Part shown: positions 7,841-50,976 of the stretch, one piece after another | Numbering within the stretch: the first letter of the stretch is position 1 | Layout of the letters: every line of letters starts with the position of its first letter | DNA from: Trichosphaerium sp. ATCC 40318 | Lineage: Eukaryota; Protista; Tubulinea | Assembly (NCBI GenBank): GCA_038496445.1 | Contig: JALMLS010000507.1 | Location: forward strand, 434,001-498,000 | Direction: 5' to 3' | Length of the DNA stretch: 64,000 bases | Made by a program: the position numbers and the translations under genes | Notes under the pieces: generated by a model | Databases searched by the model: none | Told to the model about the DNA's origin: nothing | Seen by the model: only the letters and a program-made list of their open reading frames with translations

Positions 7841-8728
7841 TCATTGTGTCCAATATAGCTGAGCAACATAAGCAATCACCAATACACATGTAAAAGCAAT
7901 GCCACCAAATATAACATTATGATTATATGCTAATGCACTCCTCCTGTAAACCTCACCACCAACCAACTGACCACCTGGTGTCCAATGTTTGAACCGTCCA
8001 ATTTTTATTCCTTTTTCATACTTCCCAACCACAGCCATATTTCCGCTTCTATACCTTATTTTATAAACCCCATGTAGCATACCTTTGTGATAGAAACAAT
8101 GTTGTTTCATTGCTCCATCACTATGCCATGTTTTATACTCGCCATGTAATTTACTAGTACTAAATATAAACGGAGGTAAAATATTCTTGTACCACTTCTT
8201 TGCTTCATCTGACAGTTTATCACCTACATAGAAACAGTGCAACAATAGGTTTCCATTGGCATGCCATGTTTTCAATTCTCCTCGTTTCTTATCATCACAG
8301 GTTTTAAACTGTTCAGCCAATTGACCATTAACATGCCATACCTTACAGTCAACTTCTTCTTTATCATTAATTCGAAATTGCTTTTTAACTTGTCCATTGT
8401 CATACCAACTTGTTGCGTGGTCACTAAGTATACCACCAACATAGAAGCATTCCTCTTGTAAAGTACCATCATTATGCCATTTCTTGTATTCTCCGTCTAG
8501 CACGCCACCTTTGAAATAGCAACGAGTGGCTACTTTATCGTTTTCGTGTTGTATCCAAACGCCATGTTTTTTGCACTTATCATCGAAACGGGTGCTTACA
8601 GCAGTTGTTTTACACAATAATGGCCATAATGCGTACATTTCGGGAGTATATTCCATGATATCAAGCTGTAGCTCTACGGGAAGGCAAAGCAACTTACATG
8701 GTACACTTCCGTTAGATAAATTTGCCAT
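7841..8728 (-). CDS. F-box-like + MORN-variant (MORN_2/YwqK-like) repeat protein, intronless, with hydrophobic C-terminus
   Basis: LLCLPVELQLDIMEY (F-box-like); repeated G(E/V)YKxWHxNGxLxxxCFYxxGxL units. Confidence 0.8.
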   Translation of the reverse strand: MANLSNGSVPCKLLCLPVELQLDIMEYTPEMYALWPLLCKTTAVSTRFDDKCKKHGVWIQHENDKVATRCYFKGGVLDGEYKKWHNDGTLQEECFYVGGILSDHATSWYDNGQVKKQFRINDKEEVDCKVWHVNGQLAEQFKTCDDKKRGELKTWHANGNLLLHCFYVGDKLSDEAKKWYKNILPPFIFSTSKLHGEYKTWHSDGAMKQHCFYHKGMLHGVYKIRYRSGNMAVVGKYEKGIKIGRFKHWTPGGQLVGGEVYRRSALAYNHNVIFGGIAFTCVLVIAYVAQLYWTQ

Positions 8729-19073: not shown

Positions 19074-20680
19074 ATGTCATTGAATAACCTACCCGATGAG
19101 TTGTCTTTAGAGATAATATTTCGTATTGGTTATCCAAAAAGTATACTGTCTTTTGCGACTTGCTCTCAATACTGGTAAAGTGTTTAATCCGCGTCAGAGA
19201 GTCCAAACGCCGAAAATGGCTAATGTTTTTCAAAAGGCACTCACTTTGCGGCGATGACGTTGTTTGGAGGCATTTATGTTGTACTCTATGGCAAGTACTA
19301 GAAAAATCGCCACCTCCGGGCAAGATAGACACTGGTGAAAGCCTAAAAAGCGAAGAACAAAAAAACATTGAAATGGAGACTTGGAATGAGTACTTTAAGC
19401 GTTGTTTCCTATTCAACACGTATTTTGAAGGTCTGTCAGCTCAAACTGGTGGATGGAAGCCGTATCCAAGTGCGTACAAGCCATTTACATTAACATCTGT
19501 GTTAGCTAACTTTATTGTTCTTCTTCTTAGTGGCTACGTACTTTAAGAGGTTAACAAGGCAAGTTGACAATGTTGACAAAGGAATTCCATTCAAAGGTTA
19601 GTTGTAAACCTTACACTTAGCTTCGCAAGATGTCATTTAACCTTGCATCTTGCTTCTGAAGAAAACGTTCATTTACTCACGTGATGTTAGGCTTCTTTTT
19701 TTGGCCTTACTTTAGACGACCTCATAATACTATTGGTATATGTGCTGGTATGACAAACATGGTTGGTGAGTACAATGAACATAAAATCATAAGGTACTGC
19801 AGGAAGAAAACTCATGGTGTTTGAAATCACGTTTGTTCCTAAAACTCGTTTTAAATTGCAATTTAGAGTGACTGAAGTATCGAAAATATGTGGAACAGCG
19901 TTAGGTATTGGTGGTAAATATGTATTGATGCCATTTCTACGATGTAATTGTATTCTTGGTTACTGGGAAGGACGATATTCTGAGGAAAGATACAATTATT
20001 TTTACTTGGTAATGACAGGTACAACTTTACTTGTTACACACTAATGAGACATGGCCTCTAACTCTCTCTTTTTCATTATAGATATTTCATATGATCTTGG
20101 ACCTCTTAGTGTATGTCATATACCTTTTATCAAGGGTGTTACTAATATTTCTTAGTCTATTGTACCTGTTGCTAAAAATATCATGAACCTAAACATACAG
20201 GTACAAACCTCACCTCGTTTCAACTTGATTGTTAACCGAGCTATACAGTATTCTGGAACCGTCTTGTGCACGATATCTGATGCTCCCAAGGCATTACCAA
20301 TGACAGTTACTATCCGTAATGTATCTTCGACAAGATCTGGGAGTATACCACTGCTTGGAAAAGCATCACCACTTATTACTGTCAATGACTTAGGGACAGT
20401 GTCTGTCACTATTAGTGTTGATGGTAAAGAGATGCAGTATGATGGTTCTTTCTTCTCTATGCATGATAAGCTGTGGAATGATCATAAAGTACATCGTTAT
20501 GTTCGTGATACTAAGGATAAGCCTCTAGAGTATGGTATGCTTTTTGAAGAGTCTGATGGTAAGTACTCCATGTTTAGTATAAGAGGTGATTGTATGTTCG
20601 GTAATCTACATGATAATGATAGCTTTTATTTACAACATAAGCGTAACTATCATCAAAAGATTAGAGAGATATATATGTAA
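19074..20680 (+). CDS. F-box protein with an unrecognised C-terminal domain
   Basis: MSLNNLPDELSLEIIFRI...TCSQYW..CGDDVVWRHLC. Multi-exon. Confidence 0.75.
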
Positions 20681-21105
20681 TACAATACAATAATAACTCG
20701 TACTTTCTTTGACGTTGGCTGTACATTGTAATGTCTCATAGGTTTTTCTAAGCAACATTGTATTCAAGCAACCTCAGTTTAAGTAACTGAATCACAAACA
20801 GGACCGCAAGTTTGCTTATCCCACGTGATAATCACTTTTATTGACTGTTTCCGTTTCTAGTCTTCTCCACCACTTTCATTTGTGGTGATTAAGACTATGT
20901 ACACAAACAAACCCTGTAGAGGTAGGTTTATACTTTTCTTCTCCAGTGTTGAACAAAATTTATCTTGAACCTTTTTTGCCTTGTGTCCTGTTGCGTCATT
21001 GACACGGAGTGTTTGTGTACCGTTTTTTAGGAGTTGAGAGAAAGAAACGACTTCCACACTAGACAAGTAGCATATCTTCCTTTCATATCATCATTTCATC
21101 CAACA

Positions 21106-22149
21106 ATGCTAACAAACTGTATTAACGAAGTATCTAGTAATAGCGATATCAACGCTGAGCTATTAGACATACCAAACGAGATACTCGCTCACTTATTCAA
21201 ATGCTTGCGGCGCTATGATCGATTTTCTGTTTCCCAAAGCTGCAACCGACTATATGAAGTTATACATAATCACGTGGGATACAAGAGAATTAATATACCC
21301 GCATATGAAGCAACTTCTCATTGTTCACGTCTTTGTGGCAGTCCATTATTAAAAAATACAAATATAAGCGTCCAGTCACCTTCAGACTCAGATCTTAGTA
21401 TGCTTTCAGGTGTCCTACACCTTACACTTAAGTTTAGAACCAAGAGTATCTTGCTAACAGATGACGGATTGAAGTCTATTTGTGGTGTACATCACTTATC
21501 ATTAAAGAACTGTCACAGTATCACAGACACAGGATTAATGCCGCTAGTGGCACACCTCCAGTCCATCCACTTGTATGGAGTTCCAAATCTGACCTCAGAA
21601 CTTATCAAAACATTTGCTGGGATACCACATATCAGTATACCAAACTCTTCAGCTACCGATGAGGTTTTGGTTGCTTTATCAGGAGTAATTTCATTAGATA
21701 TACAAAAATGTGAGCTCATTACAGATGCAGGTGTTTCAGCTTTAGCTGGCGTTCATACCATAAATTTAAGTGGTACAAAAGTGACTGATAAAGGTGTTTC
21801 AGCTTTGGCTGGTGTACACTCTATCAGTCTTTATGATTGTAAAAGTATCACTGGAGAGTGCATGAACAGCCTTGCGGGTGTACACCACATCAACTTGTCA
21901 AGCACAAATGCAACAGATGATTGGATAAAACCTTTGTCTGGTGTGCACACTATCAATCTTTATGGTTGTAAAGGTATCACAATAGAGAGTATGAAACATC
22001 TTTCAAGTGCACACAGTATCGATTTATCGGAGACAAATGTAACAAATGATTGGATTAAATATCTCTCCTGCGCAAAGATACTACAATTGCGACGCACAGC
22101 AACGACATATGAGTATCTGAAAACACTAGAAGTAGATTTAGCACTATGA
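21106..22149 (+). CDS. F-box + LRR protein, intronless
   Basis: LLDIPNEILAHLF (F-box) followed by about 10 LRRs of type (I/V)TDxGxxxLAGVHTINLS. Confidence 0.85.
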   Translation: MLTNCINEVSSNSDINAELLDIPNEILAHLFKCLRRYDRFSVSQSCNRLYEVIHNHVGYKRINIPAYEATSHCSRLCGSPLLKNTNISVQSPSDSDLSMLSGVLHLTLKFRTKSILLTDDGLKSICGVHHLSLKNCHSITDTGLMPLVAHLQSIHLYGVPNLTSELIKTFAGIPHISIPNSSATDEVLVALSGVISLDIQKCELITDAGVSALAGVHTINLSGTKVTDKGVSALAGVHSISLYDCKSITGECMNSLAGVHHINLSSTNATDDWIKPLSGVHTINLYGCKGITIESMKHLSSAHSIDLSETNVTNDWIKYLSCAKILQLRRTATTYEYLKTLEVDLAL

Positions 22150-46261: not shown

Positions 46262-46590
46262 TAAGTGAATTTACAAATTGTAATTATAAAGATAACAGAA
46301 AAGAGCGTATTGTACAATAGAAGGGAGATGAAGTATCTCTCCATTAATAGTTTTTTTTTACAAAAAGCAATTTAACTCATAAATCTGCAACTCTCAGACA
46401 GTGGACGAGAGGTTGATGTGCTCACCAGCCTGGGTTAATCCGTAACATAATCATGTATTTCTCATACCTACATCCTCATCCTGACCGGATATTGTGTTCT
46501 GCATGGGAAAGAAGTTTAGAATAAGAAGTATTCAAACACTTGTTAAGTCTGTTTTGTTTTTTGTGATTGTAGCGTATACGACGGTTGGAA

Positions 46591-48067
46591 ATGTCTGACG
46601 ATGATCGTCATAAAAGAACATATGTTTACGTACTTCTTGCGGCAGCATCATGTACTCTAATTGCCAGTTGTTATATGATTATTAAAATACTTATAACACG
46701 TCGCTTTAATACAATGCCACAGCGATTTGTACTTTACGTGTTCATACTGGATTATTTTATTGGTGTATCAGACTTACTTACTGCTTGGACTACAGACGGA
46801 ACCGATAAAGGCATGCCTAGCATATTTAGTTTCTTTTTTGCGCATGTGCGAGGCTTTTTCGTTTAAATTTCATAAAATCGATGTATTTATGCTTAAAATC
46901 ACGTGTTTACGCTCTTATTTTTCAAATAGACGCTCTTTGTCAAATTCAAGGCGCAACAGAAAATTACTTCAACTTGGGACAGTTACTTATATCTGTTGTT
47001 ATCGCTGGCAACTTGTATTGGTTTGTGGTTAGGCACAAGTAAGAAAGTTTAGCAAATGTTGGTCTAGCTTTATTTTTGCATGACACGTGATAGGCAGCGT
47101 ATGACGAGTAATGAACCTATTTACATAGCACTTGTTATCATTATACCTGGCGTTTTATGTACACTACCTTTTACGACAAACTCCTATGGTAAAGACACAC
47201 CGTAAGATATTTTCGTTGTATTGATTGAAATATGTCTCACATTTTTCTTTGTCAGGTGGTGTTGGATTCCGCACGATGCAGGTCATAAATCTATAACACT
47301 TATGTAAGCTTCATGTTTTATGGTTTCGTTCTTCCGATACTAACTTTATACGTCAGGTGGCAACTTGTAACTCATTGGGTGCCAATCATTGGTTGTTTTC
47401 TAGTAATTTTGTATTTTAATATTTGCATTGCACTTCGTGTTTTAAAGATAACAAAGGCGGTACGTAATACATACAAAAACCGAGTATACAACAAGTGCTC
47501 ACTTACACCGATTTCTGAAGAACAAAACAATTCAAGTCTTTACTTTTCTTTTCTTTTTTTTCTAATGAACAACAAGCATTCATCTCGTCAAGCTTTGGCT
47601 AAAAAAGTAGAAAGAACTCTACTTGTCAGAAGACTTATTGGATATCCAATTATTATTTTTTTCGTATGGATAGGACCTATAATAAGGTATCTTATTATTG
47701 AACAGACACACAAGGAATCGGTACAATACAACATTCGTTCTAACACTTTTTGTTGTTTGACTTTTATTTTAAGCCTTTCGCTCTTGTGATCATCTGTTTG
47801 CTTACAAGACCTCTTATTGGTTTCTTTGATACTATATTTTATGAGTTTAGTTATAATCAGTCAGTATGGGGTGGATGTTTTATGACTGGTAAGAGATGAT
47901 AGTTGTTTTAAAATGTTTTTGATTATCATTTGACTTAGTTTTTCTTTACAGGAACAAGAGAGTACAACGAAACGTTAACTGAAACAGATGACAGCGTGTC
48001 ATTTGGATCACGTGGTAGTCTAAGAAGTAGTATTGGAAACCGTAATGAATGGGTACAAGGTGAATAG
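46591..48067 (+). CDS. 7TM GPCR, cAMP-receptor-like (cAR/Git3 class)
   Basis: TM helices, LCQIQG, WCWI, RLIGYPIIIFFVW; GC donor at 46811. Confidence 0.85.
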
Positions 48068-48451
48068 TTAAAAAGAAAATATACCTATCACAACATTGCA
48101 TGATTTGTAAAGAAAGTGTACCCAATGTCCGTGAGGAAATAATAAATTGTATGTATAAATTGCAGATTTACGAACAGCAGACAACAAAAACTTCGAAATA
48201 TAGGAAACAAACACTTTAACTTCCTACTGTACTAGCGATTGATATGTACGAAATCTACCTCTTTTTAATTGTGAATGTATCAAAGGAGCATGTATGAAAA
48301 GTAGCCTCTGTATCCAGTAAACCATATTCGTATATCCGTTACACTTGTGATTCTCGTGCATCAGGTATTGATGGCTCATCAGGGTACGTTCAAAGAAGGA
48401 GTTAAGCAATCTTTGGCATGCTTAAAGTTATTTACGAAGGCAGTGTACGCT

Positions 48452-49420
48452 ATGACTACGTTATTGTCGCTACCTGATGAGGTCTTAGTACTCATTTTGG
48501 AGCGTTTGGAAGCAACTGATTTAATTTCTGTTTCCTACGTGTGTAGCGATGCCCGTACGCCTGCTAATGATAGTAAAGTGCGTAACAACATCTTTTCGTT
48601 AAAATAGAACATAATCAAACACAAGTGTTAAAGGTATGGACGAATCTGTCTTATAGAGACTTTGACGGGTGCTTGATGAATATGACAACAAAATTCGAAG
48701 ATAATAGTAAACGACGGTACTACGAAACAAAAAAGGTTCTAGATACAGAATATCAGGGGTCTTACGTTGAGGGAATACGTATGTAGTCTCCAATACTAGC
48801 TCAGTAGAGTTTTATTGCCAGAGTGTTCTATTGAAACTAATCTACGATTAGGAGGTTGGAAAGCTTACATACGAAGGATTACAGGCACTCATTGTTCGAG
48901 TAATAAGTACGGTGCTATTTTCATGAAAGATGGCAAGCTTTTGGCCAAATCGACATTGTTTAATGTAAGCAAACAACAACTTGCTGTTTTGGGGAAAGGA
49001 TCTGGTTCTCAGCTACCAACAGTCACTTTGGGTGATAAAAAGTACTTACTTTTTTTTTATTGTTGCTATTAATAGCACATAAGCCTCTCTCAAAATCAAG
49101 TTATCCAGAATATATTCCAGTAACAGTATCAAGTGCTATTTATAGTACAAGAAACTGACTGATAAAGGGATTTTTCAGAGAGTCTTGTGGCACTTTTTGA
49201 AGAACCTTTTTTGTGGTTTTTGTTGCTTACGATTTTGATAACTAGGTACTTGATTCTAGGATCTGATGATGATGCCATTACTGGTATTTGTGGAACATGT
49301 GGCTTTACTTGTTATAAATCAAAAACGATATGTGTTCTTGGAGTCTATGATATGCACCCAAACTACTCTTCCTCAGCTGTAGGTCGTATACAAAGTTACT
49401 TGGAAGATCTAGGTTATTAA
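48452..49420 (+). CDS. F-box-profilin fusion protein
   Basis: Four exons (48452-48577, 48634-48778, 48852-49041, 49246-49420). F-box LLSLPDEVLVLILERL..VC..ANDSKVW; profilin-like GWKAYI..GAIFMKDG..TLGDKKYLILGSDDDAITG..GFTCYKSKTICVLGVY..VGRIQSYLEDLGY. Confidence 0.85.
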
Positions 49421-49886
49421 ATATATCACTAGTCACTCACATCAAACAATCTGTAGTTGTTTGTTGTTTAGAGTGTCTTATGAGCAATGATTGATCATTA
49501 TCCTCGCTTCTATTCAAGATCTTCTAGGACAATCATCGTGTATCAAACATAATCATCTGAGTTAGACTGCAAGCAGTTTTTTTTTTCAGTCCACTATCAA
49601 TTTCACTATTGATCGTACAAGTCCGTTGACTATTTCTCATTCTACTGCTACTCATTCCAAGGGTTACCTCAGTTATTCTTTGTATTTTTTATTAAAAACA
49701 ACCTCTAAAAAGTGATTCTGTACAGAAACAGTAAAAGGTTAGAGGAGTAAGTTTAATAATTACGATAGTTAAGTGTTGCTAAACGGTTGAAGTTAAGTCG
49801 AGTCGTATTTTGGTTATTGATCGGTATCAGAAGTAACTGCTTCGCCACAAATCTCTTAGGCCTTACTATCGTCATAGAAGCCAACC

Positions 49887-50976
49887 ATGCAAGCGAAATG
49901 TCTTAGAAAAGATTACATTCATGACGATATCAACACTGAGCTTTTAGACATACCAACAGAGATACAGGCTCATTTGCTCAAGTTTTGTAAGCGTTCTGAT
50001 AGATTTTCTGTTTCCCAGAGCTGCAAACGGCTGAGTGATGTTATACGGCATCATGTCGGTTTTGTGGGAATTTCATTTCTAAGCAGAGAAAGTTGTTCAT
50101 GTCTTTGTGGCAGTCCACTATAAAAAATACGAGAATATCGGTTTACGACCCAACAGACTCAGATCTTAGTTTCCTTTCAGGTGTTCAACACCTTTCACTG
50201 TGTCACAGTGTCAGCTTGCACACACACCACGGATACAAGGGTACCTCGCTAACAGATGACGGATTGAAGTCTATTTGTGGTGTACGTCATTTGTCATTAG
50301 TGAATTGTTGCAAAAATATCACCGATGCAGGATTTAAGCCACTTTTGAGACACCTCAAGTATATTGAATTGTTTGGAACCACAAGCCTGACCACGGAGGG
50401 TATGAAAGCATTTGCTGGTATACCAAGCATCGGCTTACCAATGTCCTCAATTACAGATGAGGTTTTGGTAGCGTTATCAGGAGTACATACCATAGATATA
50501 CAAAAATGTAAGCTCATTACAGATGAAGGTGTTTCAGCTTTGGCTGGCGTTCATACCATAAATTTAAGTGGTACAAAAGTGACTGACAAAGGTGTTTTGT
50601 CGTTGGTTGGTGTACACAATATCAAGCTTTGTGGGTGTAAACATATCACTGGAGAGTCTATGAAATACCTGGCAGGTGTACACTCCATCAACTTGTCACG
50701 CACAAATGCAACAGATGATTGGATAAAACCTCTGTCTGGTGTGCACAGTATCAGCCTTCAATCGTGTAACGGTATCACAATAGAAAGTATGAAATACCTT
50801 TCAAGAGTGTACTATATTGATGAAGCACACACAAATGCAACTGATGCATGGCTCATCTTACTAATTTAATTGAATTAAATTATAGATCTAATTTTTTTGA
50901 CAGAATTAATGGAATTACAGATGACAAGATTAAAGCGCTAAAAATGAAAGGCGTTTCAGTTATCAGCTATCGATAG
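49887..50976 (+). pseudogene. F-box + LRR paralogue of 21106-22149 with two frameshifts
   Basis: Long near-identical stretches shared with the first copy; 1-nt deletion near 50121 (cca cta taa vs cca tta tta aaa); second shift near 50850 before an LRR-like ending (..ITDDKIKALKMKGV). Confidence 0.75.

What the first reader, a model, noticed from the sequence alone, without database searches (positions are those of the whole stretch)
48452..49420. F-box fused to a complete profilin fold
Seen: four exons splice in frame to an N-terminal F-box, a ~50-aa linker and a full profilin-like domain. It keeps the polyproline-groove aromatics (W..Y of GWKAYI; C-terminal YL...GY) and the LGxxKY / DD..I.G / KSKT..LGVY strands. 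Known: F-boxes recruit substrates to SCF ligases, and profilins are normally stand-alone proteins binding G-actin, poly-Pro and PIP2. Inference: an SCF substrate receptor that uses profilin to ubiquitinate actin or poly-Pro proteins (formins, WASP/VASP), linking the cytoskeleton to the proteasome. I do not know a characterised example.
Basis: partly seen in the sequence, partly recalled or inferred. Interest (0 to 1): 0.85.

Follow-up and report, generated by a model that had tools for sequence, protein, structure and literature searches.

The report
F-box–profilin fusion gene, mostly mis-spliced
This amoeba-type genome does carry a gene joining a ubiquitin-ligase handle (F-box) to a divergent copy of the actin regulator profilin, but the only RNA evidence shows it spliced so that the start codon is lost and profilin is cut in half.

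Summary
The DNA observation holds. Exon 1 (48452-48577) is a Pfam-significant F-box. Exons 3 and 4 match the N- and C-terminal halves of Pfam Profilin in the right order, and a language-model search assigns each half to profilin independently. Four GT..AG exons give an open 211-codon frame.

cDNA contigs from one sample (two alleles) confirm introns 1 and 2 exactly. The F-box/linker and the first half of profilin therefore sit on one mRNA, and profilin has no ATG of its own.

The cDNA contradicts the rest of the model:
- The third splice uses a nearer acceptor (49041>49084, 42 nt) instead of 49245. This gives a stop at 49121-23 and leaves exon 4 untranslated downstream.
- A further 44-nt intron (48445-48488) removes the ATG and the LPDEVL core of the F-box.
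- The longest ATG-ORF of the observed cDNA is 110 aa and has no F-box.

I found no homologue of either profilin half in 1.84 billion representative proteins or in metagenome contigs, and no paper describing the architecture. The next gene is a frameshifted F-box-LRR copy.

Verdict: a real, lineage-specific F-box-profilin architecture, apparently undescribed. Production of the complete protein is unproven, and the gene may be lapsing.

The parts
48434..48444 (+). 5' end of the cDNA (11-nt first exon of the observed isoform)
   Evidence: The loose-end letters that follow the SMART template-switch oligo (ACGAAGGCAGT in X2, AGGCAGT in X1) match only this place in the window, where 0.02 matches are expected by chance.
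48445..48488 (+). 44-nt GT..AG intron removed in the cDNA. It contains the ATG (48452) and codons 1-12, including the LPDEVL core of the F-box.
   Evidence: My inference from the loose ends at 48489 in both runs. The skipped letters start with GT and end with AG.
48452..48577 (+). Exon 1 of the 4-exon model: start codon and F-box (42 codons)
   Evidence: Pfam F-box-like 5.1e-9 and F-box 6.7e-8, both above their cut-offs. The cDNA covers 48489-48577.
48578..48633 (+). Intron 1, 56 nt, GT..AG
   Evidence: The joint 48577>48634 is present in the contigs of X1 and X2.
48634..48778 (+). Exon 2: end of the F-box (V-W-T-N-L) and a ~45-aa linker with no family match
   Evidence: Frame. No Pfam hit. 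Covered by cDNA.
48779..48851 (+). Intron 2, 73 nt, GT..AG. This is the junction that fuses the F-box/linker to profilin. If it were retained, a stop would follow at once.
   Evidence: The joint 48778>48852 is present in X1 and X2 with 128-145 letters on the shorter side.
48852..49041 (+). Exon 3: N-terminal half of the profilin-like domain. It starts G-W-K-A-Y-I and has no ATG of its own before it.
   Evidence: Pfam Profilin positions 3-50, E 0.015. Atlas feature search: 35 of 40 neighbours are profilin clusters. Covered by cDNA.
49042..49083 (+). 42-nt GT..AG intron actually removed in the cDNA (proximal acceptor)
   Evidence: The joint 49041>49084 is present in X1 and X2.
49084..49245 (+). 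Stretch kept in the cDNA but intronic in the 4-exon model. It has an in-frame TAA at 49121-23 (TAG in the second allele) and two more stops. The second allele has a 2-nt deletion at 49177.
49042..49245 (+). Predicted 204-nt intron 3, needed for a complete profilin. It is not seen spliced. The intron starts GTACTT and exon 4 also starts GTACTT. The two ends can pair (AAGUACUU is a palindrome).
   Evidence: RNA fold -51.7 kcal/mol, z = -3.06, 0 of 200 shuffles fold as well. No other copy in the window.
49246..49420 (+). Exon 4 of the model: C-terminal half of the profilin-like domain plus the stop codon
   Evidence: Pfam Profilin positions 69-127 of 127, E 5.8e-5. PDB profilins align to their C-termini. 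Atlas feature search: 36 of 40 neighbours are profilin clusters. Present in the cDNA, but downstream of the stop.
49421..49745 (+). 3' untranslated region covered by cDNA contigs
   Evidence: X1 reaches 49440. X2 contigs cover 49383-49582 and 49583-49745.

Best explanation
This is a real, transcribed, lineage-specific member of the genome's large F-box family, and its C-terminal recognition module is a divergent profilin domain. Read as four exons, it would give a 211-aa SCF substrate receptor. The F-box would dock on Skp1, and the profilin domain would hold a ligand for ubiquitination. That ligand is more likely a poly-proline protein than actin.

The steady-state mRNA seen is non-productive in two independent ways. 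A 44-nt 5' intron deletes the ATG and the start of the F-box. The third intron is cut at a proximal acceptor, which gives a premature stop and leaves the profilin C-half untranslated.

The most likely reading is a young product of domain shuffling that makes little or no full-length protein and is lapsing under birth-and-death turnover of F-box genes. Shown here: the domains, the open frame, introns 1 and 2, and the two unproductive splices. Inferred: Skp1 docking, the ligand, and the lapsing status.
For: - The F-box scores above the Pfam cut-offs, and the two profilin halves are collinear.
- Independent support for profilin comes from PDB sequence matches and language-model neighbours.
- One 808-nt cDNA contig, identical to the window, carries joints 48577>48634, 48778>48852 and 49041>49084 and keeps 49084-49440.
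- A second allele (X2) shows the same joints.
- The 5' letters after the SMART oligo map uniquely to 48434-48444, and the 44 skipped bases run GT..AG.
- The longest ATG-ORF of the observed cDNA is 110 aa and has no F-box.
- The four confidently placed cDNA joints, all in this gene, skip 42-73 nt. Two less certain joints in the neighbour's repeats skip 49 and 57 nt. The required 204-nt intron would be an outlier.
- No homologue of either profilin half was found.
- The adjacent F-box-LRR gene is a frameshifted copy of an intact paralogue. Decaying F-box genes therefore exist at this very locus.
Against: - The 211-codon frame, all splice signals of the productive model and the ATG are intact in the reference allele. 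The exon variants seen in the partial contigs of the second allele are one F>Y, one G>D and one synonymous change, with no stop or frameshift.
- The domain is far from canonical profilins yet still open. This argues for a long history under coding constraint.
- The evidence comes from assembled contigs of a single sample. Contigs drop minor isoforms, so a productive form below roughly a quarter of the transcripts would not be seen.
- The direct exon 3-exon 4 junction recreates the profilin motif L-G-D-K-K-Y-L-I-L with no gap against the Pfam model (positions 64-69).
- The 204-nt intron folds unusually stably, with its two ends paired. This could favour the distal acceptor under some conditions.
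Confidence: 0.55

Rival explanations
1. It is a fully functional SCF substrate receptor. The productive four-exon mRNA is made as a minor or condition-specific isoform, for example in another life stage. The two unproductive splices are then noise or a regulatory off-switch. The profilin domain recruits poly-Pro proteins (formin, VASP or WASP type) or actin for ubiquitination.
For: - The frame and splice signals are intact, and no disabling change was seen in the exon parts covered by the second allele.
- The F-box is significant in Pfam.
- The poly-Pro groove aromatics are retained: N-terminal W..Y, C-terminal Y-L..G-Y.
- The exon 3-exon 4 junction restores a conserved profilin motif.
- Contigs cannot exclude minor isoforms.
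- The intron ends pair in a stable fold.
- Other F-box fusions of this genome were judged real by earlier agents (not tested here).
Against: - Both alleles show the same doubly unproductive form as the assembled majority.
- No joint 49041>49246 is listed.
- There is no orthologue or paralogue to show selection.
- The basic actin-contact stretch is replaced: R-G-K-K becomes T-G-I-C.
Confidence: 0.33
2. There are two separate genes, a small F-box gene (exons 1-2) and a stand-alone profilin gene (exons 3-4), that only look fused.
For: Profilins are normally stand-alone proteins. Retaining intron 2 would end the F-box protein at once with a stop.
Against: - A single cDNA contig crosses 48778>48852 in frame, with 145 letters on the shorter side.
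- Exon 3 has no in-frame ATG before the G-W-K-A-Y start of the domain. The first ATG lies about 25 residues inside it.
Confidence: 0.02
3. The functional product is a short one. It would be either the 110-aa ORF of the observed cDNA (linker plus half a profilin) or an F-box plus half-profilin of about 167 aa made from an ATG-retaining, proximal-acceptor isoform.
For: These are the ORFs that the observed splice pattern allows.
Against: - Half a profilin sheet lacks the C-terminal helix and three strands, so it is unlikely to fold.
- An out-of-frame ATG precedes the 110-aa ORF.
- Exon 4 is still a clean profilin C-half with an open frame, which would be pointless if it were never translated.
Confidence: 0.05
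4. The C-terminal part is not a profilin, and the resemblance is due to chance or to another profilin-like fold.
For: Each half alone scores below the Pfam gathering cut-off (15.8 and 23.6 bits against 25). Exon 3 gives no PDB sequence hit to profilin.
Against: - The two halves hit the same family in the right order and cover model positions 3-50 and 69-127.
- Exon 4 aligns to the exact C-terminus of 14 solved profilins.
- Language-model neighbours of both halves are almost all profilin clusters.
Confidence: 0.03

Closest known systems
F-box proteins of the 'other domain' class (FBXO-type SCF substrate receptors)
   Same: An N-terminal F-box of about 45 aa that is significant in Pfam, followed by a linker and a C-terminal protein-interaction module. 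The window holds several more F-box genes with LRR or MORN-like tails.
   Different: The C-terminal module is a profilin domain. I found this combination described in no paper. Skp1 binding is untested. The observed mRNA has lost the F-box start.
Canonical profilins (PF00235), e.g. Acanthamoeba profilin I (1ACF) and plant profilins (5FDS)
   Same: Collinear match to both ends of the family model. N-terminal W-x-x-Y, the G-x-K-Y strand, G-V-Y-D, and a C-terminal helix ending Y-L-x-D-x-G-Y.
   Different: It is not a stand-alone 125-135-aa protein but the tail of an F-box protein. It is very divergent: each half alone scores below the Pfam cut-off. The basic R-G-K-K stretch is T-G-I-C, within a run of five Cys. 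The domain is split by an intron that the cDNA does not remove as needed.
Cullin-3 BTB-Kelch adaptors that bind actin or actin regulators (recalled from the literature, not tested here)
   Same: The same logic: a cullin-docking module fused to a cytoskeleton-binding module.
   Different: The docking domain (BTB against F-box), the cullin and the binding fold all differ. There is no homology.
PX domain-profilin fusions noted elsewhere in this genome (s1-383814, s1-406823)
   Same: Profilin used as a module inside a larger protein in the same organism.
   Different: The partner domain differs. Those are first-reader notes only. I could not see their sequences or compare the profilin domains.

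Membership tests
F-box protein (SCF substrate receptor) | F-box motif recognised above the curated family threshold | tested here: met
   PF12937 scores 36.2 bits (cut-off 24.3) and PF00646 scores 32.6 bits (cut-off 20.5) on exon 1 alone.
F-box protein (SCF substrate receptor) | A separate C-terminal substrate-binding domain on the same polypeptide | tested here: inconclusive
   It is present in the 211-codon model, and exon 2 is joined to exon 3 in the cDNA. The observed mRNA, however, encodes neither the F-box start nor the whole C-terminal domain.
F-box protein (SCF substrate receptor) | Binds Skp1 and assembles with cullin-1 | not testable with these tools
   This needs a pull-down or a co-fold. 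The spliced protein could not be handed to the fold predictor.
Profilin (PF00235) | Match to the family model over its whole length, above the gathering score | tested here: inconclusive
   The halves score 15.8 bits (positions 3-50) and 23.6 bits (positions 69-127) against a cut-off of 25. The joined domain could not be scored. The sum of the two would exceed the cut-off.
Profilin (PF00235) | Poly-proline groove aromatics at the N- and C-terminal helices | tested here: met
   The N-terminus reads G-W-K-A-Y-I. The C-terminal Y-L-E-D-L-G-Y aligns with D-Y-L-I-D-Q-G-Y of plant profilin. The third groove tryptophan (W31 in human numbering) could not be placed by a tool alignment.
Profilin (PF00235) | Basic actin-contact residues in the beta-hairpin before the last strands | tested here: not met
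   I-R-G-K-K-G of plant profilin aligns with I-T-G-I-C-G here. The role of these residues in actin binding is recalled from the literature.
Profilin (PF00235) | The complete domain is encoded by a mature mRNA | tested here: not met
   The cDNA contigs stop the frame at 49121-23, before the C-terminal half. The joint 49041>49246 is not seen. Contigs can miss minor forms.

The most novel reading that the evidence does not exclude
The gene is a working SCF receptor that uses a profilin domain to bring poly-proline cytoskeletal regulators, or actin itself, to the proteasome. Its output is gated by splicing at both ends. A 5' intron deletes the start codon. A proximal or distal acceptor choice, perhaps steered by the stable fold that pairs the two ends of the 204-nt intron, decides whether the profilin is completed.
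Probability: 0.2. Interest if true: 0.7.

Novelty: new variant of a known kind. Interest (0 to 1): 0.4.

Why it matters
If the full protein is made, it would be the first described case of profilin used as the substrate-recognition module of a cullin-RING ligase. That would be a direct wire from actin and formin regulation to proteolysis, and a ready-made natural tool for degrading poly-Pro proteins.

If it is not made, the locus is a clean example of how frame-based gene models in intron-rich protists can overstate what is expressed. It would also show how F-box domain shuffling produces short-lived inventions. The same locus may hold a recent intron gain, given the 6-nt direct repeat at the intron ends.

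Tried and rejected
- Homologue search with exon 3 by word index: no candidates.
- Exhaustive HMMER search of 1.84 billion representatives with exon 4: only two hits. Both are junk translations of tandem repeats matched through many short stretches. They were rejected.
- Metagenome contig scans with exon 4 and with exon 3: nothing confirmed.
- PDB sequence search with exon 3: only designed LRR proteins at E > 1, so no support.
- A crude intron survey of the window to build a splice-site model and a length distribution: too many false candidates. I did not use its scores.
- Search for copies of the 204-nt intron or of the flanks in the window: none, so no support for a repeated introner.
- A possible 36-nt micro-exon (49084-49119) with a second intron 49120-49245 would keep the frame and insert 12 aa at the G-D-K / Y turn. 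That second intron is not removed in the cDNA either.
- The option 49120-49167 is broken by the 2-nt deletion in the second allele.
- Two joints in the neighbour (50281>50331, 50398>50456) lie in LRR repeats and have short sides. I did not count them as evidence for or against general cryptic splicing.
- Findings look-ups by sequence and by words were blank, which per the operators means nothing.

Full report
**What is in the DNA**

The window is AT-rich (36.5% G+C) and eukaryotic, with short spliceosomal introns. Earlier notes of this scan call the genome amoeba-type. I did not verify the taxon.

From the ATG at 48452, four exons join through GT..AG introns of 56, 73 and 204 nt. They give an open frame of 211 codons ending at the TAA 49418-20. 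The exons are 48452-48577, 48634-48778, 48852-49041 and 49246-49420.

**The two domains**

Exon 1 alone matches F-box-like (PF12937, 36.2 bits, E 5.1e-9) and F-box (PF00646, 32.6 bits). Both are above their curated cut-offs. Exon 2 has no family match and serves as the end of the F-box plus a linker.

The profilin evidence is as follows:
- Exon 3 matches Profilin (PF00235) model positions 3-50 (E 0.015).
- Exon 4 matches positions 69-127 of 127 (E 5.8e-5). The two exons therefore hit one family in the right order and reach both of its ends.
- Exon 4 aligns end to end with the C-terminal half of 14 solved profilins, including Acanthamoeba profilin I/II and plant profilins.
- In the ESM-Atlas feature search, 36 of 40 neighbours of exon 4 and 35 of 40 neighbours of exon 3 are profilin clusters.
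- The direct exon 3-exon 4 junction recreates L-G-D-K-K-Y-L-I-L, which runs without a gap onto model position 69.
- Exon 3 has no in-frame ATG ahead of its G-W-K-A-Y-I start, so it cannot be a stand-alone profilin gene.

**What the RNA shows**

The only runs that hold this locus (X1 and X2, one sample) are cDNA. Their contigs begin with the SMART template-switch oligo.

One 808-nt X1 contig is identical to the window. It carries the joints 48577>48634 and 48778>48852, so introns 1 and 2 are exactly as predicted. This includes the junction that fuses the F-box/linker to the profilin N-half.

The cDNA departs from the model in two places.

- The third splice. The contig joins 49041>49084, a 42-nt GT..AG intron, and keeps 49084-49440 contiguous. 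The frame then reads 13 extra codons and stops at TAA 49121-23. Exon 4 lies downstream, untranslated.
- The 5' end. The letters between the oligo and 48489 (ACGAAGGCAGT) match the window only at 48434-48444 (0.02 matches expected by chance). The 44 skipped bases start with GT and end with AG. A further intron has therefore been removed, and it contains the ATG and codons 1-12, the L-P-D-E-V-L core of the F-box. This 5' joint is my inference from the loose ends. The tool did not list it.

The X2 contigs represent a second allele. Within the model's exons, this allele differs by an F>Y change, a G>D change and one synonymous change. Within 49084-49245 it has two substitutions and a 2-nt deletion. 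It shows the same joints.

The longest ATG-ORF of the cDNA as observed is 110 aa. It covers the linker plus half a profilin and has no F-box.

**How much weight this carries**

- The contigs come from one sample and drop minor isoforms, so a productive form below roughly a quarter of the transcripts could be hidden.
- Against that, two independent unproductive events are the assembled majority in both alleles.
- The four confidently placed joints, all in this gene, skip 42-73 nt. Two further joints in the neighbour's LRR repeats (49 and 57 nt) are less certain. The 204-nt intron needed for a complete profilin would be an outlier.
- The stretch 49084-49245 behaves as non-coding. It contains a 2-nt indel and a stop that is kept as TAG in the second allele. 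This fits the 4-exon model's view that the stretch is intron.

**Conservation and context**

I found no relative of either profilin half:
- the word-index search was blank;
- the exhaustive search of 1.84 billion representatives gave only two repeat-derived junk hits;
- both metagenome scans were blank.

Selection could therefore not be tested. These blanks are weak evidence, because the organism's own proteins do not seem to be in those libraries.

The window is rich in F-box genes. The gene immediately downstream (49887-50869) is an F-box-LRR copy, 76% identical in DNA to the intact paralogue at 21034-22149. It has a 1-nt deletion that splits its frame. Decaying F-box genes therefore sit right here.

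**Mechanism**

If the 211-aa protein is made, the parsimonious mechanism is the usual one for F-box proteins. The F-box docks on Skp1-cullin-1, and the C-terminal domain presents a bound protein for ubiquitination.

The alignment with plant profilin shows two things:
- The C-terminal Y-L...G-Y is kept, and the N-terminus keeps W-x-x-Y. These are poly-proline groove positions.
- The basic I-R-G-K-K-G hairpin, which contacts actin in canonical profilins (recalled from the literature), reads I-T-G-I-C-G, inside a run of five cysteines.

I therefore rank a poly-Pro ligand above actin as the target. All of this is inference.

**An oddity of intron 3**

The intron begins GTACTT and exon 4 begins GTACTT. 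AAGUACUU is a palindrome, so the two ends pair. The intron as a whole folds much better than its shuffles do (z = -3.06, 0 of 200 shuffles as good).

This could be the scar of an intron gained by insertion with a target-site duplication. It could also be a structure that helps the distal acceptor. I found no other copy of the intron in the window, so neither idea is tested.

**Novelty and verdict**

No paper in the searchable library describes an F-box-profilin protein. One apparent co-mention was the word 'profiling'. Earlier notes of this scan list PX-profilin fusions and many F-box fusions in this genome, but not this one.

I file it as a new variant of a known kind: an F-box protein with an unprecedented recognition domain. 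My probabilities for the readings are:
- about 0.55 that the gene makes little or no full-length protein and is lapsing;
- about 0.33 that it is a working receptor whose productive mRNA is minor or conditional;
- about 0.1 in total for the three remaining rival readings.

Interest is 0.4. The architecture would be striking if it functions, but the only expression evidence speaks against the complete protein, and there is no conservation to lean on.

Family and fold prediction on the joined protein were not run, because a spliced sequence has no reference. A second look at reads was not possible, because read laying is capped at one call.

Noticed in passing
window 49887-50869 (+), compared with 21034-22149 (+): The downstream neighbour is an F-box + LRR gene, 76% identical in DNA to an intact single-ORF paralogue 28 kb upstream. 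It lacks one T near 50117-50118, which splits its frame into two overlapping ORFs. It is a candidate frameshifted pseudogene (or a homopolymer-adjacent assembly error) and is still covered by cDNA contigs.
   Followed up: partly
window 49042-49251: Intron 3 starts with GTACTT and the following exon starts with the same six bases. AAGTACTT is a palindrome, so the intron ends pair over 9 bp. The whole intron folds at z = -3.06. A 14-nt perfect palindrome (TGCTATTAATAGCA, about 49063-49076) sits just before the proximal acceptor. This may be an intron-gain scar or a structure that steers splice-site choice.
   Followed up: partly
window 7841-8728 (-), ~19080-19178 (+), 21034-22149 (+): At least three further F-box genes lie in the same 64 kb: F-box + MORN-like repeats, an F-box at the end of an ORF, and F-box + LRR. 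This fits a large, shuffling F-box family.
   Followed up: no
window 49290-49320 (exon 4): The profilin hairpin that is basic in canonical profilins carries five cysteines in 22 residues here (C-x2-C-x3-C among them). Its meaning is unknown. It caused spurious hits to repeat-derived proteins in the big search.
   Followed up: no
window 46585-48066 (+): The upstream gene looks like a multi-pass membrane protein (long hydrophobic ORFs). It has no cDNA coverage from 47800, where the laid stretch began, to its end at 48066, and the locus stays uncovered up to 48457.
   Followed up: no
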